Positions 25,505-51,000 of a stretch of DNA of 64,000 bases are shown piece by piece. Position 1 is the first letter of the stretch; every line of letters starts with the position of its first letter. Location of the stretch: the NCBI GenBank assembly GCA_048013815.1, contig CM106585.1, positions 13,206,001 through 13,270,000 on the forward strand. Reading direction: 5' to 3'. Position numbers and translations under genes: made by a program. This stretch comes from Setoptus koraiensis. Its lineage: Eukaryota; Animalia; Arthropoda. The notes beneath the pieces are model-generated. The model was not told where the DNA came from. It was given only the letters and a program-made list of their open reading frames with translations, and searched no databases.

Positions 25505-28500
25505 GTGAGTAGCCCATTGCAGATGACGACAATCTGACGACAGTCTGACGACAAATTTGCAAATTGGAAATGTGAACAATCTGACGACAAATTTGCAAAT
25601 TGGAAATGGGAAATTTCAAATTTGTGCTCGACTGGGGCTTGTCGACAAACGGACAATGACCGTACAGTGAGATCATAGTCAGATATAAACAGTGCAATGG
25701 CGTGGTTGGCAAGACTGAGCCAATAATGGTGAGCCATAACTTTGTTAGTGTCAATTACAATTATTATCCGGCCAGCGCCGGCCCGATAATTGTAATTGTT
25801 GTGGCCGGCTCTTCTGGTCGCACCGATAAACTGATAAACACCGATAAACCGACAAACACTGATAAGCATTGCGCCGCATGGGCGCCTTAAGCCGTCTATC
25901 CCATATGATCCGTATGATCCAGCCCAAGATGCACAGAGCGAGCCATGAGTGATGCAAATTAATGAGCCTATTCAATTAGAGCGGGCATTAGCGTTATGGA
26001 TTGGGCAGCAAAAAGCTCAGCTGCTTAACCGCTTTGCAGCAGCGCCAGCGCCTGTTGTGCATTCACCTTTGGACTGCATCATTTGCATGTCACTGTCGCC
26101 ATTACTGTCACTGTTACCTGTTATCTGGCTGTCTCATTAGCCTGTGTAACGGCACCAGCAGCGACAATCGGTCATAGCGCACCGCAGATAGCAGCAGCAG
26201 CATTGTTAATTTATTGATCGCTTAAATGATCGCAGTTGCTGGCGGTTGCTAGCAACTGCGACACAACAACCTGTAGCAATTCGGTGTGTAGCTAGGGTGT
26301 ATTCAGTGTGCAATGGTGGCGTCTAGAGGCTCTAGAGATTAGTTACATAACTAGCGACCAACACACGACAGACAGTGTGTGTGTGTCAGATTATGTGACT
26401 CACAAAGATTGTCAGATAGATGGATAGGTGAGGCACAAAAACAGGCCACTGTAATATGTGTCTAATCACATAAACTCTGGTGACTTGTTTTTGTCGGCGC
26501 CAATCACTTTGGCCGTGCCAACAACAACGACACCAGCGACAACGACACCAGCGACAACGACACCAGCGACAACAGCGACACCGCTCGCAAAAACAACAGC
26601 CACAACTAAACGAACTCGAGTGCCGTACGTCAGCGTCGATCGATCGATTACACCGATAACTGACACTCACACACAGCCGAGCCAAAAGTGAGAGCGAAAC
26701 TGGAAAGCGATCGCAATATTCGCAGTGCAAAGTCGATCGGCTCCAGCGGAGCCTCCAGTTGACACGTTGGTGACACAACGGTGACACCTTGCTCCCACTG
26801 CCAGAGCGGCATTATTTTGCCAATGAGTCATGCGTCTTAGTCGGTGTACGACCATACACACTTACCATATATCATGACCAGGTGACTCACAGGTGACTGG
26901 GTGACTTGCCAGCAGCGACAACAGCGACAACAGCGACAACAGCGACAACAGCGACAACGGCGACAACGGCGACACTTCCTAGTGTCTTCTGGCTCATTTT
27001 GCACACACTGACAGAGCGGGCCGACGCCAGATATTAGGCAATATGCCACCGTATAGCACTGTACGGTGTGGCCTGCAACAGGTAGGTGCTTATGGGTCAC
27101 TTTGTGTGTGTCACCTGAGCTTGTGGCGCTGTCAGTGTTGTCGGCGTTGTCAGTGTTGTCGGCGTTGTCGGTGTTGTCGGTGTTGTCGGTGTTGTCGGCG
27201 TTGTCGGTGTTGTCGGTGGCAGTGTTGTGGCCAACTGCTGTCCGCCAATGCGCTGACAGCGGCCAACGGTGCAGTAATGCAGCCGCCACACGATGAATAG
27301 ATGCCCGCGATGAATAAATGCGCTTATGTTTGACACTGTCCAATTGACACTGTCAAACTGACGCCGTCAAACTGACACTGTCAAATGGGACACTGATCGA
27401 GAGAGCCAAATCGATACACACACACACACACACACATTCGAGACGCCAATATGTGACAATATGCACCGCGGCCGCAACAGTGTCGCCACAATAGGGCGCC
27501 ATTACGCAGGCCGGCCCGACATGGCGTGATTCACCGGCCAGCTATTCAAATGATTGAAACGACTCAAACGATTCAAATGATCCAAACGACTCACAAATGT
27601 TGTCAAATGTTGTCAAACGATCAGATGAGCGCCGGTGTTGGCCCGTTAACAGTCATTTAATAGTTGTCGACAAGCTGCCGCCGCCGCCTGCATTACGTAA
27701 CATTGCGTATAATAGTACACGTAATGCGGTAGCAACATCGCCGATAACAGTGCTAATACAGCCAGTTATCAATAATTGCTGCCAGCCACTTGATGCCCGA
27801 ACAGCTGATCACCGGCTGTCATGACAGCTCGCATGAGCTGTCATGACAGAGGTGTCATCACCATCAGCTGACAGGCGCACTGCACAAGGAACTGGCATTG
27901 TTGTCTGCGTGGCTTGCCTTGCTTGCGTCTGACGTTTGCCACATCTGTAACGGCACATCTGACAGATATCACATCAGATATTACAACACCTATTACAGCA
28001 CATATTACAACAGATAGTTGACACAACAACAATAATTGTGACAGCAAGATGCTGACAATTATCATTGCGTAATCTGTAATGTCAACTGTGCCACCGCATG
28101 AGCCAGCGCAACAGTAACAAGAAGTGAGAGTAACGACGAGTCAGCGGCCTACGCGATCACGGGCAGTGCAATTGTGATTATTCATTATTGCGTAACAGCG
28201 GCTGCCGATGAGGCTTACGGGTGCCGAATCACAGCGCCACATGGCAACAAATAACGGTATCGCAACACTGTGATATATGCGCCACGTTGCGAGCGCCAAC
28301 GATCGCCCGACAGCCGATTGAAAAACAGACTCGTCGTGATTGGCCGCCCTCGACAATTGTCAAACTCACTCTTGGCTCGATTTTCGAACGGCCGCTCGAG
28401 CTCACCTGTGACAGTGGCCAGCGGTCGCCGGCTCGGAACCGCTGCCGACAGCCACAGGTGAGGCGGCGTCTCGGGTCAGCCGGACAGTTTGTTTGTGGGC

Positions 28501-31500
28501 GCCCAGACTGGATTGCGGCGGCCATTGTGATTGTGCTCTCGATGACGGTGCCGTTGATCGGCGCACGGCCGACACAATTGGCCACTGGTCAGTCACCGAA
28601 ATTTGGTGCATGCGGCGCACGACTCGGTGCAGCCTCGTCAGTACAGGTGCAAGCGGCGTGATGCGGCCATTACATAATAATACAAATTGTTGCAATGCTA
28701 CATAACGCCTGTTACATAATGTGCCGGTTGCAACTGGTGGCAAGTTGCGCAACACAACAGGTTGTGTTTGCTGGACTCTTTGTTGTTGTTGTTGCTGTTG
28801 TTGTTGTTGTTGTTGTTGTCCGCTCTGTGTTGCGATGCGCATCGTCAGCAAATACGGCGACAAGCGGGCCGGCACTATATCCGTGTTTGCGTTGTGCGCT
28901 TGTTGTAGCGCCGCATATCGGCATACCGACCGCATACTACTGTGTAATTGCCAATGTGCGAGCGCAACCGCAGCTAGTCCCGTCAACCGCGGCTAGTCCC
29001 GTCAACCGCAAGCCGGTAGCCGCACCGAGCAGCAACGAGAGAACAACGCCGAGCGGTCACGATGGCGGCCAATAACGGGCATCGCCTTGCGCAAATCTCG
29101 GCACTCCAATCGTGACTTATCGGCGCCCAAAGTCGCGCAGCTCATTTGCACCGGCTCATTGTTCTTCGGTGGCGCATCACGACGACACTTTGCGCTTGTT
29201 GCTCTGATACGATTTTCCAATATTTTGCGCCAACGGGCCGATATTCGAGAGCTGCTGTTGGCGGCGACCGAGTCGCCAGTAGCGGCCAGACCGGACAAAC
29301 ACTGTCGCTCACGCTGCGATTCGCGCCACTTGCCCGACTGCGACTGTTTGTTCATAGTTCGGGCGACCGCGACCGTCCGCGCCACCGCTCGGGTAGCTGC
29401 GCAACGGTGAAGGCAAGTGGCCCGTTGCGCAACTCTCTCGCGAGTGGCGACTTTCGACCACTCGGCCAACGGTGCCGTGACATCACAATGGCGCGCCCGG
29501 GTCCGGCAAGCGTGCGTCGCGTCGTGTCAGCTGTTTGTTTCTGTTGTGTCAATGGCGCGCGGTCGTCATGACGACCGATGGCGGACAAACGGACACTTGT
29601 TGACGTCTCGCCGAGCGCTGGCCAGCCGAGCCGTTATGTTGGCTGGCCAGCGCCCGGCAAACGTCAACTGACACGGCGCTGAGCGCAATGAGTCGCCAAT
29701 TGAACGCGCCTATTCAACCGCTGCGATTGATTGCGAGCGACGGCGGCCGATTCGAGCGACAGCGACGGCCCGATCCGGTGAACGGGCGCCGCCCGGACGG
29801 TGCCCGGCCCGCGAGCCGCCGGCGGCCGGTCGGTCGGATATTTGTGGCCTTGCGTGTGCGCGGTGTGTATATTTAGTGCGCACAATCGGCCGATAAAATG
29901 GCCAAAACGGATTGGCAATTTGCAATTCATAATCCGTAATGAGTTTATATTTATTGCCACGGCCGTTACAATTATTTATGTTTATTATTGCATTGGCATT
30001 GTATTGGCGTTACGCGGCCGTCGCATGCCGTTAGGTGGCCGTCGCATGCCGTTAGGTGGCCGCCGCATGGCGTGATACGACAGCGCCGGCCAGTGACAAT
30101 ATAACAGCGTGATGACGATCGCGGCGCCGCCAAACCTTGAATGGATTGGTCATTGACTTGTGGCTGGCCAGTGGTGGCTCGCCAGTGGCGGCTGACCAGT
30201 CACAACCGGCCAACAGCAACCGCTCGCACCGGCACCGTTGACCGTTGCTGGCCGGCAGCGGCCACTGGCCGATCTAGTTGAGCCTGCGCGGGGAATCAAT
30301 TTGTTCAACTGTTGCTGCCACTGTGACCGACTGTGGCCAATTTGTCCGTTACCCGCTGCCCGTCACACCAGCGGACAAGTGGCCCGTTAGACCGGTAGAC
30401 GAGTCGCCCATGGCCACTTGTCGATGGGCAGTGCATTGTGGGCACAGTGGCGGCCTATTGTGGGTGCCAGTCGCATTGTATTGACCGGTGTGATTGGCCG
30501 CGCATTGTTGGCTCGAACTGCGAACTGCGATTTGCGAATCGCCAACTGCGAGCCGCCGGCCCGACAAGACAGTGGCATAATTTTAATTTTCATTGGATTC
30601 ACCGGTGACTCATTGGTGGTCAGTGCCAGTTGGCACAATGATCGCATTGAATGTCCATTGGACAGGCCCTGACAATGAGCTCACTCTTGGCTCAACAGTC
30701 TTGGGCGACCGTGATCCCCTTTCGTGTGCTGTCATGCTGATGCTGGCCCACTGGCCACTGGCTGACATTGGCCGCTGCCGACACCAACTGACAGTTGCCA
30801 GCAACTGTTGCTGTGCCTGGCTCAGCTGATCGCATACGTCAATTGATCGATATGCCGGCCGATCAATGGGCCAGCTGATCGACGGGCCAGCTGATCAATT
30901 GTGAGTGTGTGTTGGCGAGAGTTGGCCGGCCAAGCGACTGTCAAACGCTGGCTGTCAAAAGCTCTCTGACACTTTGTCGTCGTATCGCCGCTTCGACCAT
31001 TGCTCTGTCAAACTGTTTGACTCGAACACCAGCCAGCCAGCCAGCGTGGTGCGTTTGACAGCGAGCAACACATGACGCAATGGATGACGCAATGGATGAC
31101 GCAATGTATGACGCAACAGCTGATGAGTTGTGGGTGTGTCGTCGTGTGCGATATCGTTATCGCCGTGTGCCGTGATATCGTTGCCAAGCCATAGGCACAG
31201 GTTGACCATTGATTGATTATGGCACAATCACACAATCGAGTCACAATTTAGCGCAAATTGGATCACAATGGCCGGCAGTTGCGCAATGTCAAAGTCAACT
31301 GCACGGCGGTCCAATCAATGGCGCCCATTGCTGATTTGATCCATACTGATACGATTAGCGCTCGACAACATTGCACCTGTTGCCGTGTTGTCGCCATATC
31401 GGTGCCATACTGTGGCCGTGCTGTGGCCACAATAACGCTGCCGGTCAACAGTGCGACCATAGCACTGTTGACCGGCAGCGAGTCGTTGCCGGCCAGCCAA

Positions 31501-31560
31501 GCATCAGTGTCGAGCCAAGGCTAACTGGCCGTTTGAATCCGCTGTCGAGTCCAGCAGACG

Positions 31561-31600
31561 CTGTCCAAGGCTGTCCAAGGCTGTCCAAGGCTGTCCAAGG
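31561..31600. repeat. 10-bp tandem repeat (CTGTCCAAGG)x4
   Basis: Read directly. Confidence 0.9.
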
Positions 31601-34600
31601 CTGTGTAATTGCGGCCAATCGGCTAACAATAGCCGACAATTGACCAACAGCGCCATCACGGTGGTCGTGATCGGTTGCTGGATTGAAACTGTGCTTGCTT
31701 GCACTCTCGTTATCCCTCCACTTACCTGTCCATCGATCCGTCCGTTCAAACGGATATGATCGCATTTGATGCTGCCAACGGGCCGACCGGAATCGGCGCG
31801 CGCCATACCGTTTTGCTGTGTGTGTGTGTGTGTGTGTGTCTCGTTATCCAACAACAACAACACCGACAACAACGGCAGCAACAACAACGACAGCGCCACC
31901 GACAACCGCCGCCGGTTACGTCATTGTGTGTGTGTGTGCGCGCACATTGTGAAACCGATTACAAATCAATGATTTGACATGATCGAATGCGATTGAATTT
32001 GATTCACTTGACCACTTGATTGGCGCCCGTCGAGCATCGGCCGCTCGCTCGCTCGCTGACCGTTACCGCACTCTGGCCACACTTTGCGCACTTGTTGCGC
32101 CTGGCGCCTGGCACGCTGCAAATTGCGCAACAAGTAACGGCTTGTAATGAGTTATTTGAGACTGCGCTCAAGTTGTTTGTTGATCGCGCAAGCGGATATT
32201 TGAGCGGATATTGCAGGCCGCAGCGACGCATGAGCGGCAACGGGCGCAAACAGGCAGCCAGTTAGCTAGCCAGCAACACTGTGTAATACGCACACACGAT
32301 TCACCTGTGTGCGTTACACAGGCTGCGCATGTATCATCGTGTGTTGTATTATGTTGCAAACAATGACTGACCGCTTACGTAACAGCAGTAATCTAATCAT
32401 GTAACGCAGTGAGCGACAGTGTCGTAGCCGTTATATGGCCCGTTTAGCGCTTGTTTAGCGGCTGGCATACCGACACTCAATATGTGATACCAACACAGAC
32501 TGCACAGACGATGATGACCATTATATATCGTGTGCAATACGGGCCAACTGACCACCACCGGCCAGCTAATAACGCGCGAACCGCAAACGAAAATTGTGGC
32601 CCCGTTACAATTGGACACGCGCTCCATTGTGTTGGGCCATTGTTTATCGGTGTCGGCCGCTGGCGGCCAAACTGTGGCCGCCAGCGGTTGCCTCGACAAG
32701 TGGCGCCGATGAACGGGTCGCCCACAGCTACTTGCCGGTCGCTCGGCCGGCCGCCTGTTCACTTGACGCTTACGTAATGTCGAGCGCAATGTCGAGCGCA
32801 ATGTCGAGCGTCAAGTGAGTTGAGCGACCACCAAGGTTAAGATCACACACGCGTGCACTCGTTGCGCAACGAGCGAGCGCGCGACAAACAGGCGAGCGGT
32901 CGTGGGAGCGCCGGAAGTGGTCAGTTGGCCCAGCGTCGGCACAGAGTCGGCCCAGCGTCGGCTCAGTGTCGGCTCAGTGTCGGCAAAAACGTTGTGCCAG
33001 AACGACCCAGAACGGCACAGTGCGCTCGCCTAGAGCTGGGCAAGTTGTCGGCTGACAAGTGCAAGTGTCCAGGCTAAATGTCGAGCCAAATTACACTGGT
33101 CGTCGTACGAAGTATGCGAACATAAATTGCGGCTCGTGCGTCGGGTCGCACGCCAAGCGAGCAGCCAATTTATATTTCATATTTTATATTTCTCATTTCA
33201 GTTTAGCGAGCGACCCTTTTGGCAAGCTCTCAATTGGCTCCAATGGCAGAGTTCAGCGGCCACTGGCCGCTGACCGGAATAGTGGCCTGTAAGAATAGTT
33301 GTGAGCAAAGGTGAGCTGATTTTGACGAAGCCAGCGCGTTTTTTTGACGCAGCCAGCGCGTTTTTTTTTTGACACAGCCAGCGCGCTTTGACACAGCGTC
33401 GATGGCAGTGACTGCGCGGCTAATTGTTTGCCTAATTGCGACATTGTGACTGGCGCCCGGCGAGGGCCACCAACCGCAACCGCGACACCGACACCGACAC
33501 CGACGCCGACGCCAACAGCAACTGCAAATGAGACGCCAACAGCAACTGCGACGGGACACGCAACGCGCGACATCGACTATTGCATAAATGCACTTATATT
33601 GCACACTCGTTACGTGCATCGTTGGCGACAATTGACAATTGACAGTTGGCTACAACTGACAGTTGACAGTTGGCGACGACTGTCAACCGTCATTGCGTCA
33701 CAGCTTGCTCATTGGGCCGGACTGACACAGCCAATGACTGCATGTTCGCAAATGTCATACTTGGCGCTGACATTTGCGATCACATGCGGCGCTCACCTGA
33801 CCACAAACCAAACCAACAACCTCAGCCGATCATATGGCGATCATATGGCGATCATACGGCCGATCATACGGCCGATCAGCTGACTGTCAAGGCGACATGT
33901 TGGCCCATGCTGGCCAGTCGCAAAATAGGCTTCGCAAAACGAAATGAGCACAACAGGTGAACGCTGGTGGGCCACACGACGCCTAGCGGCCAGGTATGGC
34001 GCCACCGGTGAGCGGCGAGTGAGCGAGGCGGCGATATTGGCGAGTTTAGATTGGCTTGCTGTTAGAACTTGTGAGTAACAAGCGCCTGTTAGCGCTGAGA
34101 TTGTTGAGATCGTTGAGCTTGTTGAGCTTGCTGAGATTGTTGGACGGCGACGGCGGCGACAATAAAACATAACACAACGCTGCTGACGTAATAATATAAT
34201 AATAATAATAATATCATACATTACATGTCGTATTATTAGCTCACGCAGTGGTGGCAATAATATGAGCATGGCGATGATATTAATAACAATATTGTGAGCA
34301 GTGTGAGTGTATTATGTAACAGGGCTGCCAGTTTGGGCGAGTGTGAGAAGTGGAGTGACTGGCAGCGGCCAACAGCGGCCAGCAAGAGGCAAAAAGCGAA
34401 AAAAGCGCAAGCCAACCTGTTGCAAAATGGCAACATGAAATGGCATGCAAAAAACACTAGATGCCAGCCAGATAAAGCCGGCCAGATAGAGCCAGATATA
34501 GCCAGGTAAGGCCAGGTAAGCCGGCCAAGTGGCCGCACAAAGCCGGCTAAACGTCGCATCGCTTCGCGACTTGTTTCTCGGCTCGTTTGTGTGTCTCATA

Positions 34601-35004
34601 GTGGCACTTTGTTGTGTTTATTTGTCGTTTACAAACTCGCCTGCCGTTGCGGCCTCCGTTCGCCCGCGACCGGCCGCTCGTCACTCGCTCAGCTGACGTT
34701 TGCCGTGTGTGTCCCATGCCAAAGGTGACAAGCGCCGACTCACCTGTCGTGGTTGCCAGTGTCGTCGCTGCAAGCGAAGCGCCGCAATGTGAGCCGCCGA
34801 CCGAGCAAAGATGCGCCCTAATCTAATCACACTAACACAATTGGCCGCGTCACTTGGCCGCATCGCTCTTGCCGCGGCATGAGACTAGTTTGTATTAGTG
34901 TCACGCCAGCGCCGTCTGTTCACATCCATACCACTCCGTCTCGGGCGCGACTCGGGCGCATCTCTAGCGCGACCCGGCGCAACTCGATGGCGTCGCGCTC
35001 TCGA

Positions 35005-35100
35005 GCGACTCCCGACGGGCGACTCCCGACGAGCGACTCCCGACGGGCGACTCCCGACGAGCGACTCCCGACGAGCGACTCTCTCTCTCTCTCTCTCTCT
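35005..35100. repeat. 14-bp tandem repeat (GCGACTCCCGACGR)x5 running into (CT)n
   Basis: Read directly. Confidence 0.9.
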
Positions 35101-37900
35101 TGTCGCGACTCGCAAAGGCACCGACAAACCGCCAGCGATCGGCCGGCTCATTGGAATGCGTAGCGAGCGACAAACCAACGCGCCAACCAACGCGCCAACC
35201 AACGCGCCGGCCACAACTGGCTCCAGTCGCCACCGAATGCGCTGCTCCCGGCCGATCTCGGGCCGGTGGCGCTCGGCGGCGCTCGGTTGCGGGCCGTGGG
35301 CCGGCCGTGCGCGGACCCGAGCGGTCCTGAGCGGCACAACTTGTGCGGCTCAAGTGGCTCAAGTGGCTCAAGTGGCCGAAATCGGAGGTGGCCGCGAAAT
35401 TGGGCAATTGCGTTGGCCAATCGTGTGTGTCTAAAACTAATATCCACAAACTAAATATCAACAGGCGACGGCACACGGGACAGGTGAGCACTTGTTGCGC
35501 TCACCTGTCGCGTTGTTGCCGTTGTCGCGCTCACCTGTCGCTGCAATCAGTGCGCTCGATGTCGGCCTGGCCCATTGTCCTGCAGTGCGCTGCCTCGCGA
35601 TGTTTGCATTGTCGGCGGTCAGTGGGCCGGTTGTTGCGCAACAGCTCTCGCTGTTGCGTAACATTGCAATGCATCACAAACAAACAAACAAACAAAGCAG
35701 CTAAAACAAGCGGCCGCCCGAACAAAGACCGACCAGCGATGCACGCACAATGACAACGACTAATTAAGCCGATCCTAATTACCTGGCTGGCCGTCGCCAA
35801 GTGTCGGCCAGTTACCTTGTGAGCGCCCGCTGACATGCCGACAGTCGGTGGCCGTCGGTGGCGCCACAGTCAAGTGTGTCAGCGCCGACTGGCCAACAGT
35901 GCCGACAATGTGACAATTGCTGCCAGCGCTTGTTCATCAACTCGGCATAATAAACACAAACAAGTGCAATAGTTGCGTAACAAGCCCGCCTGGCCAGATA
36001 TTGTCGAGGTCAGCTGTGCGATGCATCGACTTGGTCCAATGTCGCCACAGACACACGCGCCTCACACTGTCAACTGCGACCGTCTCAGCTGACAGTCCGG
36101 CGACATCTGACAGTGCGACCAGCTGATAGTCCGGCGACATCTGACAGTGCGATCAGCTGACAGTGCGACCAGCTGACAGTCGCCGTCTGACGGATTGTGA
36201 CGTCTCCTGCGACTCACACACAAGCGCTGTGAGTCGCTCCATTTTCGCATTATTCCATTTTGACAATGCCGCCGCCGGGCCGCAAACAATGCCACCATAT
36301 ATACATTTCGCCGCATATACCGTGCATTGCGACACATACATTTTGGCAAGACTTGCCGCCGGTTGGTTGCGCAAGATTGCGCGACACATTTTGTTGTGAC
36401 ATTTTGTGTGACATTGGCCCACTTGGCCACTTCACATGGCCAATTTGCTGTCCATTGCGGTCAGTTGGCGCCCTCCTCGGCTCTGTCGGGCCGCGGGCCG
36501 GCGCCCCCTTTGACTGGGCAGTCGAGCGGGCCTCGAGTTGCCAGCGGCCCCACCGAGCGCCGGCCCGAATCAGACCGAGCGGTGGCCCGACTCAAATCAG
36601 ATCGGCCGGCGGCGCGCCCACCTGGCAGCGCGTGCTCGGGTCGGCCGGCGCGGGCGACATTCCTGGCTTTTGTGTCACCTTGTTCAATGTCACGCCGGCC
36701 ATTTGGTGGCCGCAGCGGCGGGTCGCAGTTGGCCGGCGTGCAGTTTGTTCACCTCGGCCATTAATTATTTATATGTCATGTCAGGCCGTGTGGCGATATG
36801 CGCCGAGTGGCCATTGGCAAGCCATTGGCGATCCATTGAGAAGCCGTCGAGAAGCCGTCGAGAAGCCGACTGCGCGTCGTGTCGGCGCAGTTCAGTCGCC
36901 ATTAGACTCTAATCACAGTGTAATGGCCGCTGTCAATCACTGGAGCGCTACCTGTCGGCCGAGCCCATGGCGAGAAAGTGACACCGATCGCTCGAACAGT
37001 GTCGCCGGGGCCCGTTCCGATGGCCGATGAGCGAGCCATTCGGACCATGAGCGAGCCATTCGGACGAGTCGTTCGAAATGGCTCACTTGAAACGACTCGT
37101 TCGAAACGACTCATTCCAAGTGACGGGTCGCGATCTGGCCGCTCGCTCAGGGGTCATCCGCGGTGCGCGCGGCCAGCCCGAAGGCGCCCAGGGTGACATA
37201 TGGACACAAACAAAAAGCCGTCTTGTGGCGCGCCGATAAGCCTGCGAAAAGTCGACACGCCGAGACGAGCCAGTCGCTCGCTCGATTATCTCGTTTCGCT
37301 CGGAGCGAGCGCGGCTCGGCTCGAATAAGGCGCGGATCGGGCTCGAACAAGGCGAGAATCGGGCTCGGATCGGCTCAGATTAGACTAGATTAGGCCGGCG
37401 CGGCGCACACTGCGCGGCCGCAAGTAGTTCACCCGATCGGCGGCTCGATCGCGAATGCGAATCATGCCGAGATGTGAACTACTTGGCCGGTTATTATGTG
37501 GCGACAAGTGTCAGCGCAAATAGTTGTCGCTCTTGTTTTTTATTGAATAATATTAATCTCGCAGCCCGACGCTCGCAGCCCGCAGCCCGACGCTCGCAGC
37601 CCGAAGCCCGAAGCCCGCAGCTCGGAGAAGCGCCAACAGGCCGAAAGAGAAGCGCCGAGGTTATTCACCACGGCGGCTATTTGTCGCCGCAATTGCGCAC
37701 TTGTCGCGAATCGCCACATCCATTCGGCATTTCGACTGACCATTTATTTGCACATCTCCCCACGACCATTCGTCTCGTTCGAGTCGCCGTGGCTCGCCAC
37801 TGGCACCAACGGCAAAGTCGCCGCTGGACGACATTGCGGGCGAAAGTTTGTTCGCGCAACTATGATCAATTATCGTCCGCTGTCCGGCTCGTTGGCCAGC

Positions 37901-37998
37901 CTCTCAATTTTCGGCTCTCGGCTCTCAATTTTCGGCTCTCGGCTCTCAATTTTCGGCTCTCGGCTCTCAATTTTCGGCTCTCAGCTCTCAATTTTCCG
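37901..37998. repeat. 21-bp tandem repeat (CTCTCAATTTTCGGCTCTCGG) x4 plus a degenerate copy
   Basis: Read directly. Confidence 0.9.
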
Positions 37999-40900: not shown

Positions 40901-43900
40901 ATGCTGGCGAGCCGACTGGACAGGGCGATATCAGCGCACTAGTTAACTTGCAATTAGCGCAACTTATCGGCCCGCTGAGTGTATTTGTGATGGCGGCTGC
41001 CGAGGCTTCGCTCGCAGCGTTGGCTTCGGCTGCAGCGTTGGCTTCGCAGGCAACGCTGGCTTCGAACGGACAGGTGAGACAAAGCAAACAATCGCAACTC
41101 GTTCGCCATTGCAGCTTCATCAAGTTTACTGTTGCAACTTGATGAAATTGCGCAATCGCAGCCAGATTGTGCCAGATCATGTTGCTTGTGTGGCGGCCAT
41201 TTAGTGGCCCGTTACTTGTTGCGGCCGGCGCTCACACTTGTAATAGGCACTTGTTATGTATACTTGCTATGTACACTTGTTATGTAAGAGCGGCCTGGCA
41301 TGTTTGTGCCAGGCCGTTTGACACACAGCCAGCCGATGTCAGCTGATAGAGGGCCGTTTGACACAGGGCCAGCTGATACTAGCTGATTGAGAGCCGTCTG
41401 ACAGCGAGCCGCTGCACAGCGCAACACAGAGCCGCTGCACAGCGCAACAGCGAGCCGCTCGATGGAGGGGTCAAGCCGCACTTGATGATTGACCACTCGA
41501 TTCACCTGTCGCAGCCTGTCCAGTGTGTGGTCAGTATATATACGTATGTATTACGTAACCAGTTATATAATATACAAACAGTTATACATGATATATAAAC
41601 AGTTATATATGTAGTGTATAACTGGCTGATATAGCTGGCCGCTCACTGGCAAGTTGTCAGTGGGCAGCGTCATTAGAGCGAGCGACATAAATAGCCGTCT
41701 AATTATATTCTCTCTCTTAACATGTGTATTATCTAGACAAACGCTCTCTGTGACATGGACTCTATGTACTCGCTCTATGTATACACTGTCCGTACGGGCG
41801 AGCTCCGCGTCGACGCAACGCTGCCCATCTCCGGCTCGATCTCTTCCTGTCTCGTTTGTCGCAATCGAGCGCCCTCTGTCACTGTCCGCGCTCCGTCTCT
41901 GTCCGGCAGCCTTATCGCGGTGCACCCGTCACACGGGCCTGAGAGCGGGCTGTTGGCCACTTGCGCCAACTTGCGCCCGCTTGCGCCAACTTGCACTGAC
42001 TTTCGCCAGTCTGGCCGCTGTCGCCGGTCTCGCCAGTGTCGCCGGTCTCGCCAGTGCCGCCAGTTCGGACCGGCAGCGGTGAGCCCGCTCGCGAGCCAAA
42101 TCCGACGGGACAGACCCGGCCAGACCGACGGCGACCAGACCGACGGCGGCAGACCGACCACGGCGACCACAGACACTCGGCGGGAACATTGACGAGCCCT
42201 CGCGAGCAGTGCCAATCGCGCAGTGTCCCGTTTCGTCAACGGGCAGCCTCCGAAATCAACACCGTTTGGCCGGCTCGCCTAATGGCCTGGCCAAACGGTG
42301 GCCGGCCGGCATCGCTTCGAGCGACGCCGGCGCCGCACGATCTCGCAACAGATCATTACAAAACATTACATAATGTATGACGTACGTCTAGACGTTACGT
42401 AATGCGTCCGCCGACGCAAACGAGCGCGCCATTGAGCCGCATTATGCCATTATGACGCAACTGGAGCGCCACCCGGGAGCCAGCTACCTGCGCGCTACTC
42501 GCGAGCTGCCCGACAGCCACCTGACAGCTACCTGACGGAGAGAGCATGAACGAGAGCTACCCGACGGAGCGGGAATACGAATGAGAGCGGGATGGACAAA
42601 TATAGAGATATGATAATCGCCAGTGATGACTCAATTCGGATTATGCAAGCAAACGGTCGCCCATTTGCCACTATTTGCTTTCTCTTGCGCCCTCGCTCTC
42701 ACTGGTCGCTGTTGGCCGGCCCAAGCAGCGGTTGGCCGGCTCAGACCAGCGGTTGGCCGCTGTCGGCGGCTAGGCGAGGCCTTGGCAAGCTCTGCGCGGC
42801 TGCAGCGAGCTCGCCAACGGCCGGCCAGAGCTTGCCGACAGTGGCCGACAGAGTGCGGCGAGTCGGGCTCAACGGCGGCGCCGGCAACAAGTGGCGACGA
42901 GCGTCGGTTAACCGTCGGGTGGTGACGCCGATGGCGCCGTTCAGCGCCGTTAATCGTCGCGCCGTCAGTTAACGCGACGCATGAGGCAACAAGGCGCCAG
43001 TCGCTTGTGAGTCGCAATTGGCGAGATCATCAGTCAGTCAACTGACCATTGTAATTACTCGGCGCATAATGATGAACTCACACACACACTCTAACCGCTC
43101 GTCTGTCATTTGTAATCGATAGCGGCCGGCAGCCGACGAGCCGCTGCGGGCTACGCTCGCCGGCCCGCAACGGCTCATGCGAATAAATGAATCTATTTAT
43201 TTGCTCACTGCATCGTCGACACATTGCGACACCAAATGTTACCTTTCCAATATTCGATAAAATGTGCATTGCCGATTGTGACGATTGGTCAGTTCGGCCA
43301 GTCGCTATTTAGCGCAATTTCGCACAGTTGGTAGTCAATCGTTGGCCGATTGCGCCAGTTTGCGCCAGTTTGCGCCAGTTGTCAGTCGGCTGACAAGTGA
43401 GCGGCCGACCGGCTGACAAGTGAGCGGCCGACCGGCTGGCAAGTGTCAACAGGGCCCATGATCGACAGCTGATCTGATTGGGGCCGATTCGCCGGCCGTC
43501 GGGCCGGCCATGATCAAGTTGCCGACAATGTGGCGACAGTGTCAGACGCGCTAATGCGCTAATTGGCTAATTCGCTAATTAGAGACGCATGCTGAGCACC
43601 AAGTTCAAACTGAGTTTAATTTGAGCGAGGTTGCGTAATGGTCGGGTGGCATGCAAATGATCGGTGGTTGTTTGTTGTTTCGGCTGAACAACGGCAACAG
43701 CAGCGACAGCAGCAGCCACAACAGCTACAACAACAGTCATCAGAGTTGGCTGCTGCGGCGAAATTGATGATGCTCGGCCGCGACCCCAAAAACAACACAC
43801 AACAACAAACAACAACAACAGCAGACAACGACAAACAGCAACAACCAGCAACAACAAACAACAACAACAAACAACAATCGCGATAGCGATAGGGCGAGCG

Positions 43901-44522
43901 TCTCAGGTAATGCGAGACTGTTACGCAATTGCGACGGGCACGAGGTGCAGTCGCAACGGTTGCGTAACAGTCTGCTGCAATTGTCTGCTGTCTAACAGCC
44001 AGTTGTCTGCTGATATTTGGTACAGTGTGTGAGCTGATGTCACGCGATAAACAAATGATTGCGCAATGATCAACATTGTGTGTCAAACGATATCTCATGC
44101 ACCGGCTAACCTTGCCCGCTTTGCGCACACATTATGTACCTGTCACGTTATGTACATTTATCTGCATACTATGCACATAATGCAGTGCATAGCCTGTTTA
44201 ACCTGGCAAGCTAATAACGTTGCGTAATACATTACGTAATAATACAATGCGCATAACTGCGCGTATCACTGTAACAGTGTGCTAAAAACGCTGTTTGGGC
44301 GGCACTGCCATCATTGTGTGTATTATTAGTGTGTGTGTGATTATGTGATACTATTATGTGATATTATTATGTAATGTTATTATGTAATAAGAGACACCCA
44401 GTGGTTAATTACAACAATTTGTGTGTGTTCTAGCGGCGCTGTAGCTTGCAAATTGCGCCGCAAGACCGTTCCAATAGTGTCCGTACAACAACTTGTTGCA
44501 ACAGCGCTATTGGAACAAGCAA

Positions 44523-44571
<49 letters not shown>

Positions 44572-44996
44572 GACACGCCAAGACGGCCCGCTAAAAATAG
44601 AGCGGCAAGGCCGGCCGTTGTTTTATTGGACCTGGCCGGCATGGCGACCGCGCTGACCAGCGTCGGTCAACTGCGTTCGGGTGAGCATGAGCCGAGTCAC
44701 ACGAGATTTTATTTGATTTTCGTGCCCGCCTGAGAGTCCCATTTTGAGAGTCTCGCTTCGCGAGTCTCGGTCCGCGAGTCTCGGTCTGAGAGTCTCAGTC
44801 TGAGAGTCGGGCGGTTCGGGCTGCTCGCTCGCCGCCCGCCGCCCGCCGCCCGTGTCCGCACCTTGGATACCTCGGGACGCCCTGGCTGTGTCTTCATGCG
44901 GGCTCGTTGCGTCGGCCCGACCTATCTCGCGGATAAATAAATAGTGTCTATGGATGTTGTTGGCACGGCAACTTGATCGCTTCATCGGACCACTTG

Positions 44997-45063
44997 ATCG
45001 CGCGGTCGGGCCGCCTCATCGCGCGGTCGGGCCGCTTCATCGCGCGGTCGGGCCGCCTCATCG
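44997..45063. repeat. 21-bp tandem repeat (ATCGCGCGGTCGGGCCGCYTC)x3
   Basis: Read directly. Confidence 0.9.
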
Positions 45064-48000
45064 TGCGGCCAATTTCATTAGCCGAGCTCGAATGGCGAAC
45101 CAGACACAATTGCGAGCCAGCGTTCGACTGTCCATTGTTAATTAATGACCGCCACTTTACAACTTTGACCCAACTTTGACACTTGCGTGGCCGCCGCTGC
45201 CGGCTGCCCTCTCTCTCTCTCTCTTTCTCGTTGAGATTGTCGGGATGCCGAGCTCGCCGGGCCGGCATATCATATGACCGCTGCTGAGCAGACATCGGGC
45301 ACCGGGATATCGTATGCGCATGATGCGATTGGCTATCGGGCGAGCCCGCAACCAACGCAATATCTGCATGTCGCGCACACGCCGTCAGGGTGCCAATGGC
45401 CACCGATGGGCGCCGATGCACAGATCATTTATCATGAATCGATAGGCAAGCTCGATAGGCACCGCCAAGTTGGCTGTGCGAGCTCGCCATAAGCCGGCGC
45501 AACTGTTGGCATAATCCGAGCCGGATAAACGTTGCACAGTTGTAAATAACCAATGCTAACAACTAACAATAACAGCGATGCATTTATCCGTCGGTTCGCT
45601 CTCGTAATTCGCTTGGTTGTTGGATTGAGCGGCGACACGCACATGGGGAATCATCCGCGATTGCGAGCATCAATCACTGAACTGAAACGGCAATAGCAAA
45701 TGAAATCGCTCGCTGAATTCGCCAACTGGAATCGCCGACTGAGATTGCCGGCTGAGATCGCCGGCTGAAATGGCCGCCGATCGCAACATTGTGATGCGCG
45801 CGATCAAAAGCTGGTGGGCGTCGACAGGGTTCATCGGCATATTTGTTTGTCTCTAGTGGCGTCCATTATTTTAGATATATTGTGGCATTGTCTCGGCGTA
45901 ACGAGCCTTTCGGAGGCTTTTGGGCTTTTCATGGGAGCTCCGTATCGGGCTTCGTTGCGAGCACTTCGGCCGCAGCTTCGAAATGCACAGCGCACAACCA
46001 AGTGCGGCCCATTTACAAGTTCACAGTTGCAAAATGAGCACACACAATTACTATGGTAGCTCAATTAATATATCAATACTATCGGTCATTATCGGCCGCA
46101 CTCAAACTGACCGCACTGGCACACATAATGGCGCACACACTGTGCGCTACACACATGTCATGTAATGGCACAAGCGAGCCTCACCTGTGCCCATGAACAA
46201 TGAACAGCTCACCTGTTGGCGCCGACAATAATGAGTGACCGATAATTATCCAGTGGTCAGTTGTTGGCGGCTACCAGCCAGCACTGTGCTAGCTAGTGTA
46301 TGTATCTATGAGTATATCTATGCAAGTATTATGCGCTGTCCATAAGGCGCTTACGTAATCGCTTACATAATCACACTTTCTTCTAGCATAATAGTGCAAT
46401 AACCTAAATGAGAATTGTTTTGTCTCTCTCTCTCTCCCTTCATCCCAACTCTGTTATCGCACACACGCTCTGGCACCTCAACGCACTCACGAACGTGTCC
46501 ACGAACCCCCGCCAATGACGCCAAAATAAAACGCGATAATAATTAAAAATCAAAAATAACACAAAACACACAGGTGAGTGATGTCAGGTTGCGATAGTCG
46601 ATGGTCGACGGTCGACAGTTGATGAAATAGTTGAGTCGACGGAACAGTTGATGGCCAACGCGATGGTCGATGGCCAACGGAATGGCCAAAGTGTGTCGAC
46701 TCCGAGAAGCGCTGTGTGAAAAGTAGCGCGAGATAAGTCGACGGGCGAGAGCTTTCAGCCAGGCGAGTTCAACACTCTCGCCGACCGAACACATTCGATT
46801 CGAATCGAAACGAAACGAACCGATTCGCAGCGATTCGAATCGATTCGAATGAGCGCCCATTCCAACAGGTAGATCACTCATGGCTTTGTCGCCATGGCAA
46901 CGGCTCGCGCACCCGACTATTTTTGTATTCAAATTCGCCTTCACTGGCCATGTTACCCGCTGGCTGCTGCTTGCCCGTTATGCTGGCCAACATGACGTAA
47001 CGTGTTATGTAATGCCACGCAACGCGACGTAACACTAAGCAATGTGACGTAACACTAAGCAATGTGACGTAATGCTGAGCAACGTAAAGTAAGCCAATGT
47101 AACCTACACTGACAATTGTGAATGTGACGTAATGTTGCCTAGTGAAATGTTATGCAACAACGCGCGCTTGACCAACTGGCAAATTACAATTGGCAAATTA
47201 CAACTACCAAATTACAGCCACTTCATTTGGCTACCGATCACTAACACTGGCCGCTGATCGCATGCACACTATTCATACGGTATGAATATTCACACAACGC
47301 ACATCAATGCCAATGGCACCACCATTGGCAGCAGCACATCAATCAATGCGTACTTGTCACCTGTCACGCGTTACCTGTTGCCCGTTACCTGTTATGACGC
47401 ACAATGCGACAACGTGCAACGAGAGCAACACCAACTGTGACACCCGCAACAATAACTGCAAAGCTGTTGTGTTGTGTGTGTCGCCCATTAATGGCCATAG
47501 CGGGCGCACGAGTCACAATGGGAGCACAACAACACGAGCGACAACAACACGAGCGACAACACTGTCAAAGTGAGTCAACACACAGTGTCAGACAGTGTTG
47601 GCTGTCACTGTCGGACAAAGCGGGCAACAGGTGAACGACAACAGCTGTTGTGTGTCAGTCGCTGTTGTTTGTCTGTACGTTGCATAATATGAAATAGTAT
47701 GAAATGATATGCAATGATATGCAACATGTTGCCATATCATCGATATTATGAGCTGCATATTTGCGTATTAATACACTTGTGTTAATATATTAATTATACA
47801 GCTCATAATGACAGCCGATCGATACAAACAAACAGATCGATACAAACAAACAGATCGATTGGCGTGCTGATGCGATCGATCTGTTCGCCTGTTTGGCTCT
47901 ATTTGGCCATGCCGACCTCCACCGACCCTTGCCCGTTATGGCCAGTGTGCGAGGGCCGTTACGTAACCCGTTACATACTCGTTACACTTTGCTGCTAATA

Positions 48001-51000
48001 ACTGTTTGTTGCTAGTACAAAAGTATCGGTAGCATACACGATATTGGTATTGGCGTCCACTGCCATCTACCAACCATCAGCTAATAGCCACACTATCAGC
48101 TGACTGCCATACTATCAGCTGACTGCCAAACACTGCTTACGTAACAGGACGTATTGTAATGCGCACACGCGTTGTTTGGCCAGCGACGGTCAGCGACCAA
48201 AAGCAGCAACTAATGGCAGTGACTGAAATAAAAGCGGCCAGTAAAAGAGACGCGACAAAAGCAAACTCTCGATAAGTTGCCATTTTCCTATGTCGCCGCT
48301 AATGATTGGCCGCCAACAATTGCATAATTGTGAGCGTTTTATGGCCAATCATTGAGGGCCAAACATTGACATAATAGATGTGTTGTGATAACAAGTGTTA
48401 CGTAAGTAACACTTGTCATTATGCGCTTGTTGTCATTATGCACTCGTTGTCATTATGCGCCCGTCATATTATGTTGTCATGTTCTGAAGAGTCCATGCAA
48501 TTCCCGCACAAACTATGCAAACTATGCAAACTGTGCAGACTGTGCAGACTGTGCAAACGGTCTGGCCAAATCTGGCGCTCGCTGGTGCCCGTGCACTGGC
48601 GTCAGGCTTGCCATGACCCGGCTAGAACCCAAAATCGGCACACGCGAGCCCAAGTGCGCAACGACACCGATAATGATTATCGGATAATCAATCATGATAA
48701 TTAATTATTTATGGCGATCATTTTAACTGATCCATCGGCCACAAGCAAGCGTCGCGGCATCATTAGCGACACACGTCTGAATATGGGCCCATGCCAATTG
48801 CTGCAGCGACGCCCACCATTTGTTGTCGGCGACGATGGCCAGCTATAAATAAGTTGTTATTTGATACAAACAAGTCCATAAATAGCGATATTTGTGTCGC
48901 ACAATTTCTGCGCGATCGCTCGTCGTCAATTTGAGTGTCCGCTAGCAATCGTATTTCGTGTGTTTGCTCGAGGCTCGATTCATACGAGTTGAGGGGGCCC
49001 CACAGCGAACAGCTTGCGCTGTGGGGCCCCTCAACTCGCTCAAAAGTGGCGCGAATCGCCGCAACGAGCACGTGATTGCACTTCAGGCAATCACGTGCTT
49101 GTTGCAAATGGCGATTGGCTTGCGTAACTCGAGTTGCACCTACAAGCTGGCAGCTGAATCGGCAGCGTGCATTGGCCGCCAAACACTCGACCGAAGCCGG
49201 CCCGTCAGCCGGCCCGTGGCCGCCTTGTCGGCCAGCCCACTCGATATATCGCGATATATTATGGCCGATAACTGGCCGACGATATGGAGCCGCAATCAGC
49301 TTCATTGCGTAACCATTGAGCGCGTCACTCATCGTGTTTGTCAGCGATCGTTTGGACATTTGGTCAGCGTTGCCGTTGCCGTTACATAACCGTTGCACAC
49401 GGTTACGTAACAATAATGGTATACGTGCAGTGGGCCAATATCGATCGCCAGATCGTGATCGATATTGACGGGCATCGGTGGCAGTGACCGGCACTGGCTT
49501 TCGAGCAGTGATGCGTTGCGTAACAGTGCGCCGAGAACAAGTTCAACTGATCGAGTTGATCAAACGAGTCAGCGCCATTTATCCGTCGCCAGTGGATAAA
49601 TCGCTGGAAATTCGCCGAAAAATCGGTGCAAAATCGGTGCAAAATCTGCCGTTGTCATGACAACAACATGCGACCGTCGTAATTGATTTGGCGCGATCTA
49701 GCTCGGCCGTCTAAAGCATGTGGCCGCCATCGGCGCTGCGTATGCCATGTCGATCTGTTATGATCCGTCGTTCGCAGTTCTGTCCAGTGGCGGGCCGTGC
49801 GAGCTTATCGCGAAAGCAGGTGAATCGGGCACAAGCCGTCATACAAATGTCGAGCCGTCGAACGAAAATCGCGTCGAGCGCAACGGGTCACAGCTGGCCC
49901 GGCTCGACGGGCCTTTCGAAGCCGGTCCAAGGCTCGTTTGGGCCGATTTTGGGCTGATTTCGGGCTGATTCTGGGCTGATTTGGGCCGATTTGGGCCGAT
50001 TTGGGCCGATTTTGGGCCGACTAAGGCCGACTCACAGCTGATTTGTTTGGCCCGTCTAGCCCAACTGATTGGCCGATATTGATTAATGGCGCGATATCGG
50101 CGCTGCGATAATTTGTGGGCGCCAGCTGACTGTGCCAGCACAACAACCACCACGATTGCGCAACAACCCCGTGTCAGCTGGCAACTTGCGAGTCACCGTT
50201 ATGACGTAATGAAGTTACGTAACGGTACAACGTTGTAACGCGTTGCTTTGCGCACGGTTGTGGCGAGCGCATTTTACATAACAGCCTGCATAACATAATC
50301 GTGCGTTACGTAATAGCTCACGATTGAATTAAAATGCTTGTTAAAACCAGATCGTTGCTGCAAAACGACGTTGCACTTCACTTTAGCTTCACTGACTTTT
50401 GGCATGAGTGTCGAGCTGCGCACAGTGTGGCGCAAAAACAACTCATCGGCTGTCAAATTGGCGCTGTTGGCAAATACGTCATGTACAAATAGTTGGACAA
50501 TTTGCTCGTCAATCTGTCAATTTTTCATCTGTCAATTTGCTCATTGGCCAGCGAAAGTTGTGAAAGTGACATTGTCGAGCCCGCGAGATGCCGCACACAA
50601 CGAGCGGTCACAATTTGCGCAATTTCACCAGCTATCAAGCCGTTATCTCTCGTTATGTCTCGTTGTGTTGGATATGAGTTGCGCTGGCATTGGCCGCCGG
50701 GGTCGCTCGTATCGGCGAGCCGGCGATGTGGCCGCGCACCAGGGACACTTGTCGAGTTTCGCTGTTTATCGGTTTTTTGTTTGTCGCTTGTCGCGCGCAC
50801 TGTCCGACAGCGACACTCCGATTTGACCAGTTCGACCAGTTAACCGATGTGCCAACAGCGGCGAGCATGTAATTGTGTCATTACGTAATGTTGTGCTCAA
50901 CTGGTAGCGGCCAAAGTGGCCACTGATGCTTGTGAGCTGGCCACTGGCTGGCGAGCAACCAGCGCAACGGCCAAAAAGCGCCAACTGACAATCAATCAGA

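What the first reader, a model, noticed from the sequence alone, without database searches (positions are those of the whole stretch)
27693..50888. Intron saturated with PAR-bZIP and C/EBP palindromes
Exact TTACGTAA occurs 16 times (27693, 32375, 32770, 39750, 40334, 41551, 42395, 44232, 46351, 47959, 48137, 48398, 49403, 50215, 50306, 50881). TTGCGCAA occurs at least 14 times (28745, 29087, 29425, 31279, 32123, 32862, 35634, 36367, 38630, 40190, 41148, 44059, 50156, 50615). Hybrid TTGCGTAA/TTACGCAA occurs at least 11 times (e.g. 28065, 28188, 35654, 35973, 43631, 43921, 43960, 44220, 49120, 49305, 49516), with many TTATGTAA/TTACATAA variants as well. A given 8-mer is expected about 0.5 times in 31.5 kb at uniform composition, so this is roughly 20-30-fold enrichment, and I noticed none in the coding block. 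These are the established sites for PAR-bZIP/NFIL3 (Vrille, Pdp1, Giant) and C/EBP factors. Inference: a large homotypic enhancer landscape that could tie a chitin-deposition gene to a moult or clock oscillator.
Basis: partly seen in the sequence, partly recalled or inferred. Interest (0 to 1): 0.75.

Follow-up and report, generated by a model that had tools for sequence, protein, structure and literature searches.

The report
bZIP palindrome field in mite intron
A 24-kb GC-rich stretch in the apparent first intron of a mite chitin-deposition gene (an Expansion/Rebuf homologue) holds dozens of exact binding words for two classes of bZIP gene switches; the pattern looks selected rather than accidental, but other notes from this scan report the same excess at many other loci, so a special link to moulting or the clock is not shown.

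Summary
Observation confirmed. Every coordinate is exact. The 27.0-51.5 kb block holds 16 TTACGTAA (0.2-0.3 expected under Markov orders 1-3) and 14 TTGCGCAA (1.8-2.7 expected). The 10-mer RTTRCGYAAY occurs 31 times against 1.8 expected.

The excess is motif-specific:
- The other 253 palindromic 8-mers match expectation (150 against 151).
- The only one-mismatch variants of TTACGTAA present are the three known bZIP half-site swaps.
- Flanks are unique, so this is not a repeat family.
- Only 3 of 63 sites lie in tandem arrays.

The host gene is real. Exon 1 is conserved in a congener. Exon 2 matches the Drosophila Expansion N-alpha-MH2 structure (E 4e-27). The 31.5-kb intron between them is inferred; there is no RNA evidence.

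The sites fill only the GC-rich block, not the whole intron. Clock and moult partner motifs (CACGTG, RORE, nuclear-receptor sites, Grainyhead) are absent or depleted.

This scan found the same excess before, on other DNA of this genome: at least 15 notes and one follow-up (ovo, dusky-like, AP-2, AhR, vrille and others). I could not test those notes.

Best reading: selected PAR-type and C/EBP-type bZIP sites in a retained regulatory domain, as one instance of a genome-wide layer. Site conservation and protein binding remain untested.

The parts
27001..51500 (.). GC-rich non-coding block (51-59% GC; flanks are 39-44%), made of unique sequence plus many short local tandem repeats
   Evidence: GC profile. 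No ORF has coding potential. No dispersed repeat families. TRF covers 15%. The dinucleotide signature matches the flanks, so the DNA is not foreign. No Rfam or tRNA hit.
27693..50888 (.). Field of bZIP-type palindromes: 41 TTRCGYAA, 63 TTRYRYAA, 15 TGACGYAA hybrids, and 31 full RTTRCGYAAY 10-mers
28745..41155 (.). Part of the block where the C/EBP-type TTGCGCAA sites concentrate (11 of the 14 lie in this span; 9 of 14 lie before 39.5 kb)
   Evidence: median position 36.0 kb against 45.3 kb for TTACGTAA; Mann-Whitney p 0.036; Fisher p 0.024 (post hoc split).
39750..50888 (.). Part of the block where the PAR-type TTACGTAA sites concentrate (13 of 16), including pairs of different sites spaced 12-14 bp apart
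25292..25504 (+). Exon 1 (71 codons) of the Expansion/Rebuf homologue, ending GAG|GTGAGT
   Evidence: Sequence. 62 of 74 residues identical, with in-frame indels only, in the congener contig L001; coding DNA there is about 82% identical and neutral DNA is unalignable.
25505..56968 (+). Inferred intron 1 (31,464 bp, phase 0)
   Evidence: Donor. Acceptor aactaacag|GAT, used at the same place in the orthologue L002. No RNA run is available, so the join is inferred.
56969..57202 (+). Exon 2: the start of the N-alpha-MH2 domain of Expansion/Rebuf
   Evidence: PDB 4R9P residues 42-117, E 4e-27. Pfam MH2, E 4e-9. 45 homologous exon-size ORFs found.
31072..31116 (.). Tandem array (12-bp unit, about 3.8 copies) that multiplies a TGACGCAA hybrid site
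39341..39466 (.). Tandem array (13/26-bp unit) of ATCAGCTGAC E-box words, the second enriched palindrome of the block
59873..63054 (.). Smaller cluster of four TTGCGCAA downstream of exon 2, probably in intron 2
   Evidence: Exon 3 was not found in the window.

Best explanation
The 24-kb GC-rich block is a retained cis-regulatory domain in the inferred first intron of the mite's Expansion/Rebuf homologue. Its palindromes are high-affinity sites, kept by selection, for homodimers of two bZIP classes. One class is PAR/NFIL3-type (RTTAYGTAAY); the other is C/EBP-type (RTTGCGYAAY). A minority of sites are hybrid or CRE-hybrid and would fit heterodimers.

The sites sit in local clusters under about 150 bp wide, and several pairs are 12-14 bp apart, so neighbouring dimers could bind cooperatively. 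In these families, activators and repressors compete for the same word (PAR activators against E4BP4/NFIL3, as described in PMC6627103). A dense array would therefore convert the activator-to-repressor ratio into a sharp on/off or level decision for the gene.

Similar fields are reported at many other loci of this genome. This one is most likely an instance of a genome-wide bZIP regulatory layer in the few long non-coding domains this compact genome keeps, not a private link between chitin deposition and a moult or clock oscillator.

Shown: the enrichment, the motif grammar, the non-repeat origin and the gene identity. Inferred: protein binding, selection, regulatory effect and target gene.
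For: Enrichment:
- TTACGTAA 16 against 0.17-0.33; RTTRCGYAAY 31 against 1.8; the D-box 10-mer 20 against 0.5.

Specificity:
- Only 3 of 256 palindromic 8-mers are enriched. The rest sum to 150 against 151 expected.
- Of the 12 one-mismatch classes of TTACGTAA, only TGACGTAA (7), TTGCGTAA (11) and TTATGTAA (13) occur. The other nine have 0 occurrences.
- Half-sites with TTGT, the CpG-decay product of TTGC, are depleted (1 against 2.0 and 0 against 3.1), whereas TTAT, which PAR factors tolerate, is kept.
- Flank -1 is R in 71 of 82 half-sites, and +1 is Y in 109 of 126. This matches the published D-box consensus RTTAYGTAAY (PMC6627103).
- An AT-rich word is the most enriched 8-mer in a 55% GC block, against the compositional trend.

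Grammar:
- Homodimer palindromes are favoured over hybrids (16/11/14 against 11.3/20.5/9.3 expected; p 0.003).
- The two classes are partly separated in space.
- Short-range clustering: 25 site pairs within 40 bp against about 10 expected.

Origin and setting:
- Flanks are unique and only 3 of 63 sites lie in tandem arrays.
- Neighbouring genes are compact: Brr2 is split only once, Dhps is intronless, and Dhps to SYS1 is about 220 bp. A 31-kb intron is therefore an outlier here.
- The sequence is confirmed in an independent run.
Against: - No binding, accessibility or expression data exist. No RNA run holds the stretch.
- Site conservation could not be tested. The congener contig ends at about 26.56 kb. 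Three runs from the same studies as the holder runs, two of them labelled as other organisms, did not align to 44-50 kb, and whether they are relatives is unknown. An ORF-based search for the congener's copy found nothing.
- Exon-2 loci of at least 7 more distant species show no such field: 1 TTACGTAA in about 95 kb. Their architecture differs, and that DNA is mostly coding.
- The target gene is assumed only from position.
- Genome-wide recurrence rests on unchecked scan notes.
- The motif consensuses for partner factors come from insects and vertebrates.
Confidence: 0.6

Rival explanations
1. The sites are bound by a bZIP protein but serve a domain-level or architectural role that is the same at all such blocks in the genome. 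Examples are marking or insulating long non-coding domains, anti-silencing, or chromosome organisation in a holocentric mite. On this view they do not regulate Expansion/Rebuf in particular.
For: - The sites track the GC-rich block, not the intron.
- Density is roughly even over 24 kb, with 1-8 sites per 2-kb bin.
- Scan notes report the same words in long non-coding domains next to many unrelated genes.
Against: - The local clusters, paired sites and other co-enriched transcription-factor words (CAGCTG, CAGGTGAG, GAGA) look like ordinary enhancer grammar.
- The two site classes are partly separated, as in modular enhancers.
- No architectural role is known for these bZIP families (own knowledge).
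Confidence: 0.2
2. One reading: the field ties the chitin-deposition gene to a moult or circadian oscillator through Vrille/Pdp1-type factors.
For: - The D-box consensus is met.
- The host gene is an Expansion/Rebuf homologue.
- Some other loci flagged by the scan are cuticle or epidermal genes (ovo, dusky-like). This is a lead only.
Against: - No clock or moult partner motifs: CACGTG 2 against 2.1, AGGTCA 1 against 8.6, and RORE, FTZ-F1, EcRE and Grainyhead all 0.
- Half of the sites are C/EBP-type, not D-boxes.
- The same excess is reported at unrelated loci.
- The exp/reb paper read for its regulators names Spalt and no bZIP, and a search for vrille with tracheal and chitin returned no paper making the link.
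Confidence: 0.1
3. The excess is a neutral by-product of composition or mutation in GC-rich DNA of this genome (a k-mer bias or biased gene conversion), with no protein binding involved.
For: - The excess coincides with a compositional block.
- It is said to recur genome-wide.
- A Markov order-4 model already explains part of it: 4.3 of the 16 TTACGTAA.
Against: - There is no general palindrome excess (150 against 151).
- The most enriched word is AT-rich in a GC-rich block.
- The allowed variants are exactly the bZIP half-sites, and random one-mismatch decay products are absent.
- There is a flank preference one base beyond the 8-mer.
- CpG-decay variants are asymmetric: TTAT is kept and TTGT is absent.
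Confidence: 0.08
4. The sites are remnants of a dispersed repeat or transposon family that carries the palindrome.
For: The block is rich in short tandem repeats (15% TRF coverage).
Against: - All sites have unique flanks beyond +/-1.
- No dispersed families were found apart from low-complexity CAACAA.
- Only 3 of 63 sites lie in tandem arrays.
- There was no Pfam hit on the two ORFs of the block that were scanned, the longest (256 aa) and a 211-aa one.
Confidence: 0.02

Closest known systems
PAR-bZIP / NFIL3 D-box elements (consensus RTTAYGTAAY; Pdp1, Vrille and Giant in insects; DBP, TEF, HLF and E4BP4 in vertebrates)
   Same: Same 10-bp consensus, including the tolerated Y at position 4 and the R/Y flanks. 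20 full matches against 0.5 expected. Consensus as cited in PMC6627103.
   Different: Known D-boxes occur singly or a few per promoter or enhancer. Here there are dozens over 24 kb, mixed with C/EBP-type words and without E-box or RORE partners.
C/EBP sites (RTTGCGYAAY; Slbo and Irbp18/Xrp1 in Drosophila)
   Same: 21 full matches against 1.7 expected. Hybrids with the CRE half-site (TGACGCAA) are enriched, as expected for C/EBP-ATF heterodimers, while the CRE palindrome itself is absent.
   Different: The density and domain size are far greater. The consensus is quoted from my own knowledge, not from a paper read here.
Homotypic clusters of transcription-factor binding sites in developmental enhancers
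   Same: Local clusters under about 150 bp, site multiplication partly by short tandem duplication, and location in a large intron of a tissue-specific gene.
   Different: These are perfect-consensus palindromes at 50-90-fold excess over a 24-kb domain, and they reportedly recur across the genome. Usual clusters are degenerate sites at a few-fold excess over about 1 kb (own knowledge).
Drosophila expansion/rebuf (N-alpha-MH2 chitin-deposition genes)
   Same: Exon 2 aligns to Expansion residues 42-117, and about two thirds of the residues are identical.
   Different: Regulation by a bZIP has not been described for exp/reb; the paper read here names Spalt (PMC4305360). The more distant orthologue loci fetched show no such field within the up to 10 kb of upstream flank fetched, where a tandem gene family lies on the opposite strand; their exon 1 was not located, so the length of their first intron is unknown.

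Membership tests
PAR-bZIP D-box | 10-bp consensus RTTAYGTAAY | tested here: met
   20 full matches against 0.5 expected. Flank statistics. Consensus from PMC6627103.
PAR-bZIP D-box | Bound by PAR-bZIP or NFIL3 dimers | not testable with these tools
   No binding data. The mite's bZIP genes could not be fetched.
C/EBP site | Consensus RTTGCGYAAY, with hybrids to the CRE half-site tolerated | tested here: met
   21 against 1.7 expected. TGACGYAA 15 against about 3; TGACGTCA 0.
Homotypic binding-site cluster / enhancer | Site density above a composition-matched background, with local clustering | tested here: met
Homotypic binding-site cluster / enhancer | Sites conserved in relatives more than flanking DNA | tested here: inconclusive
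   The congener contig stops before the block. Other runs do not align. The ORF-based search came back blank.
Homotypic binding-site cluster / enhancer | Drives or modulates expression of the host gene | not testable with these tools
   No RNA run holds the stretch.
Clock- or moult-controlled cis-module | Co-occurring clock (CACGTG, RORE) or ecdysone-cascade (EcRE, FTZ-F1, NR half-site) or Grainyhead words | tested here: not met
   CACGTG 2 against 2.1; AGGTCA 1 against 8.6; RORE, FTZ-F1, EcRE and Grh all 0. The consensuses are from my own knowledge.
Dispersed repeat / transposon-derived motif | Shared sequence extending beyond the motif | tested here: not met
Expansion/Rebuf (host gene) | N-alpha-MH2 domain without an MH1 domain | tested here: met
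   Exon 2 matches 4R9P at E 4e-27. Exon 1 has no Pfam hit. The rest of the domain and the C-terminal part lie outside the window.
Expansion/Rebuf (host gene) | Exon 1 spliced to exon 2 across the block | tested here: inconclusive
   The splice sites and phase fit. Exon 1 is under coding constraint. There is no RNA evidence, and exon 1 is not recognisable in distant orthologues.

The most novel reading that the evidence does not exclude
In this mite lineage, one or two PAR/C/EBP-type bZIP proteins have become a genome-wide reader of the few long non-coding domains that survive genome streamlining. Each such domain (at exp/reb and, per scan notes, at ovo, dusky-like, AP-2, AhR, vrille and others) is saturated with perfect RTTRCGYAAY palindromes. 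The palindromes would act as a shared domain-wide switch or chromatin mark. That mode of regulatory-domain organisation has not been described in other animals.
Probability: 0.2. Interest if true: 0.8.

Novelty: new variant of a known kind. Interest (0 to 1): 0.5.

Why it matters
Exact consensus palindromes for one transcription-factor family at 50-90-fold excess across a 24-kb domain are far outside what is usual for animal enhancers. The grammar seen here points to selection: only bZIP half-site variants occur, there are no random decay products, and homodimer words are preferred.

If the recurrence elsewhere in the genome holds, this compact mite genome would be an unusually clean system for reading how one bZIP family controls a whole set of developmental and cuticle genes. 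It would also help explain why a streamlined genome keeps certain long non-coding domains.

For this locus alone, the result is a testable candidate regulatory domain for a chitin-deposition gene. It is not evidence of clock or moult control.

Tried and rejected
- **Repeat or transposon origin:** rejected. Flanks are unique and there are no dispersed families.
- **General palindrome-forming bias:** rejected.
- **Hidden exons, RNA genes or tRNAs in the block:** none found.
- **Conservation in relatives:** four routes failed.
  - The window's Dhps protein is not on record.
  - The congener contig L001 ends at about 26.56 kb.
  - Laying contigs of four runs on 44000-49999 (6,000 letters) gave only a same-species run; the three other runs did not align.
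  - A word search with a spurious ORF spanning four sites found nothing.
- **Exon-2 orthologue loci (L002-L010):** fetched as comparators. They are too distant, and the stretch upstream of exon 2 is occupied by a tandem gene family.
- **Literature:** no paper holds both TTACGTAA and mite. No link between vrille and chitin genes was found.
- **Spliced model:** exons 1 and 2 were searched exon by exon, by reference. The joined protein was not built or searched.
- **The big protein search** was not used.


Full report
**What is in the window.**
- Pfam scans identify a PIN-domain ORF (4324-5337, minus strand), the spliceosomal helicase Brr2/SNRNP200 (8092-14714, minus, split once), deoxyhypusine synthase (21704-22792, plus, intronless) and a SYS1 homologue (about 23.0-23.6 kb, plus).
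- From 16.1 to 20.8 kb lies a T/G-rich low-complexity tract that ends in a 500-N gap.
- From 27.0 to 51.5 kb the GC content rises to 51-59%, against 39-44% on either side.
- No ORF in that block has coding potential by a codon model trained on the window's genes. The two ORFs of the block that I scanned, the longest (256 aa) and a 211-aa one, have no Pfam hit. There is no Rfam family or tRNA.
- The block's dinucleotide signature matches the flanks, so it is native DNA.
- Another report of this scan calls the genome a mite related to gall mites. I did not verify the taxon. The tight gene spacing fits the streamlined eriophyoid genome described in PMC7738191, where the median intron is 170 bp and the median intergenic spacer is 538 bp.

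- In the block, TTACGTAA occurs 16 times, TTGCGCAA 14, the hybrid TTGCGTAA/TTACGCAA 11, TTATGTAA/TTACATAA 13 and TTGCATAA/TTATGCAA 7. Together these five words are 61 of the 118 TTNNNNAA words in the block.
- Markov chains of order 1 and 3 trained on the block predict 0.17-0.33 TTACGTAA and 1.8-2.7 TTGCGCAA. Order 4, which already contains most of the word, still predicts only 4.3 and 4.9.
- TTACGTAA is the most over-represented non-microsatellite 8-mer at orders 1 and 3.
- The 23.6 kb of other non-coding DNA in the window holds 1 TTACGTAA and 4 TTGCGCAA.
- An independent run from another sample and study reproduces 44.0-48.4 kb with only 3 SNPs and one 16-bp deletion, so the sequence is real.

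**The excess is specific and has the grammar of bZIP recognition.**
- Of the 256 palindromic 8-mers, only TTACGTAA, TCAGCTGA and TTGCGCAA stand out. The other 253 sum to 150 observed against 151 expected, so there is no general palindrome-making process.
- Of the twelve one-mismatch classes of TTACGTAA, only three exist at all: TGACGTAA (7), TTGCGTAA (11) and TTATGTAA (13). The other nine have no occurrence. These three are the known alternative bZIP half-sites: CRE, C/EBP and the Y tolerated by PAR factors.
- In a half-site matrix, enrichment is confined to dimers containing TTAC or TTGC. TTGT, which CpG decay of TTGC would produce, is depleted (1 against 2.0 and 0 against 3.1). The CRE palindrome TGACGTCA is absent.
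- The base 5' of the word is R in 71 of 82 half-sites, and the base 3' is Y in 109 of 126. This gives RTTRCGYAAY, which occurs 31 times against 1.8 expected. The D-box form RTTAYGTAAY occurs 20 times against 0.5, and the C/EBP form 21 times against 1.7.
- The D-box consensus, and the competition of PAR activators with the repressor E4BP4 for it, are as stated in PMC6627103.
- An AT-rich word is the most enriched 8-mer in a GC-rich block. Random decay products are missing. Both facts argue for maintenance by selection rather than for a compositional or mutational by-product.

**Two site classes and a local arrangement.**
- Homodimer palindromes are favoured over the hybrid: 16/11/14 observed against 11.3/20.5/9.3 expected from half-site frequencies (p 0.003).
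- TTGCGCAA lies mostly in the 5' half of the block and TTACGTAA mostly in the 3' half: medians 36.0 and 45.3 kb, p about 0.03, on a post hoc split. This suggests at least two factors and some modularity.
- Sites cluster at short range: 25 pairs within 40 bp against about 10 expected, with the excess fading by about 160 bp.
- Several pairs of different sites with different spacers sit 12-14 bp apart.
- Flanks beyond +/-1 are unique. No dispersed repeat family exists. Only 3 of 63 sites lie inside tandem arrays, although short tandem duplication does multiply some words, for example TGACGCAA four times at 31072-31116.
- The field is not purely homotypic. ATCAGCTGAC and CAGGTGAG E-box words and GAGA runs are also enriched.

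**The host gene.**
- An 81-codon ORF at 25292 ends its coding part at a consensus donor, GAG|GTGAGT, after 25504.
- In a congener contig (L001, Logan SRR33593474; Dhps 94% identical) this exon keeps 62 of 74 residues, with in-frame indels only, and the last 29 residues are identical. Most of the surrounding non-coding DNA there is unalignable.
- At 56969, after the acceptor aactaacag, begins a 78-codon exon. It aligns to residues 42-117 of the crystal structure of the Drosophila Expansion N-alpha-MH2 domain (4R9P, E 4e-27) and hits Pfam MH2.
- The same exon borders are used in a more distant orthologue.
- Expansion and Rebuf are the MH2-only proteins needed with chitin synthase for chitin deposition (PMC4388265, PMC4305360, PMC9894549).
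- The join is inferred. No RNA run holds the stretch, and exon 1 is not recognisable in distant orthologues.
- I searched the two exons separately by reference and left out the joined model.
- Exon 3 was not found in the window.

**Where the reading goes too far.**
- The sites fill the GC-rich block, not the intron. The last 5 kb of the same intron (52-57 kb) has none.
- Words expected for clock or moult control do not accompany them. CACGTG is 2 against 2.1. The nuclear-receptor half-site AGGTCA is 1 against 8.6. RORE, FTZ-F1, EcRE and Grainyhead words are all 0. The consensuses are from my own knowledge.
- The exp/reb paper I read for regulators names Spalt and no bZIP. A search linking vrille to tracheal or chitin genes gave nothing relevant.
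- Other notes of this scan, in the same genome, report the same excess in long non-coding domains at many loci: AP-2, AhR, a RhoGEF, ovo, dusky-like, vrille and several unnamed ones. One follow-up at ovo concluded that the excess is probably not special to that gene. These notes are leads I could not test, because only this window of the genome is readable here. They changed my reading from a gene-specific tie to one instance of a genome-wide layer.

**Comparisons.**
- Exon-2 loci from at least seven other species (74-83% identical in the exon; about 95 kb in all) hold one TTACGTAA. Upstream of exon 2 they carry a tandem family of 500-800-residue genes on the opposite strand, and exon 3 lies close by.
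- The long motif-rich intron is therefore not an old feature of the gene. These loci are mostly coding, however, and the species are distant.
- The informative comparison is the congener's copy of the block, and I could not reach it.

**Verdict.**
- The words are best read as selected PAR-type and C/EBP-type bZIP sites in a retained regulatory domain of the Expansion/Rebuf homologue (confidence about 0.6).
- An architectural, domain-level role is the main rival (0.2).
- The moult/clock tie is speculative (0.1).
- A neutral bias (0.08) or a repeat origin (0.02) is unlikely.
- No paper in the library reports TTACGTAA in a mite.

Noticed in passing
window 26437-26520: A non-coding element of about 76-85 bp at the start of the intron is almost perfectly identical to the congener contig L001, while the DNA around it is unalignable. 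As RNA it folds better than all 200 shuffles (z -3.6), and it has no Rfam hit. It could be a conserved enhancer core or a small RNA.
   Followed up: partly
window 16104-20766 and 20767-21266: A 4.6-kb T-rich tract with scattered G (unit roughly TTTTTTGTTT), with extreme GC and AT skew, runs directly into a 500-N gap. This may be an assembly problem or a real low-complexity satellite between Brr2 and Dhps.
   Followed up: no
window 3835-4554: A 358-bp unit is duplicated in tandem at 99% identity and overlaps the 3' end of the PIN-domain ORF (4324-5337, minus strand). It duplicates the ORF's C-terminal coding part and two bZIP-like words (4088/4446 and 4121/4479).
   Followed up: no
window 59873-63054: Four exact TTGCGCAA lie within 3.2 kb downstream of exon 2, in 44-47% GC DNA. 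This looks like a second, smaller C/EBP-type cluster, probably in intron 2.
   Followed up: partly
L002 1-9517, L004 1-9260, L005 1-9896, L006 3-9441, L008 2030-6703, L009 2-3998: In several other species the stretch upstream of the Expansion/Rebuf MH2 exon holds a tandem array of 500-840-residue ORFs on the opposite strand. They have no Pfam hit and are only weakly similar to each other, within and between species (21-27% identity). This appears to be an unnamed, fast-evolving gene family in conserved synteny. It is absent from this window.
   Followed up: partly
window 27000-51500: Two further words are strongly enriched in the block. ATCAGCTGAC (TCAGCTGA, 12 against 0.4-0.9 expected) comes partly from tandem arrays at 39341-39466 and 36086-36180. 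ACAGGTGAG (12-13, on both strands) is the other. In addition, the nuclear-receptor half-site AGGTCA is depleted (1 against 8.6).
   Followed up: partly
window 8092-14714: Brr2/SNRNP200 is encoded in two large ORFs with a single short gap (12990-13230), and Dhps has no intron. This fits an intron-poor, streamlined genome, and it makes the 31-kb intron next door an extreme outlier.
   Followed up: no
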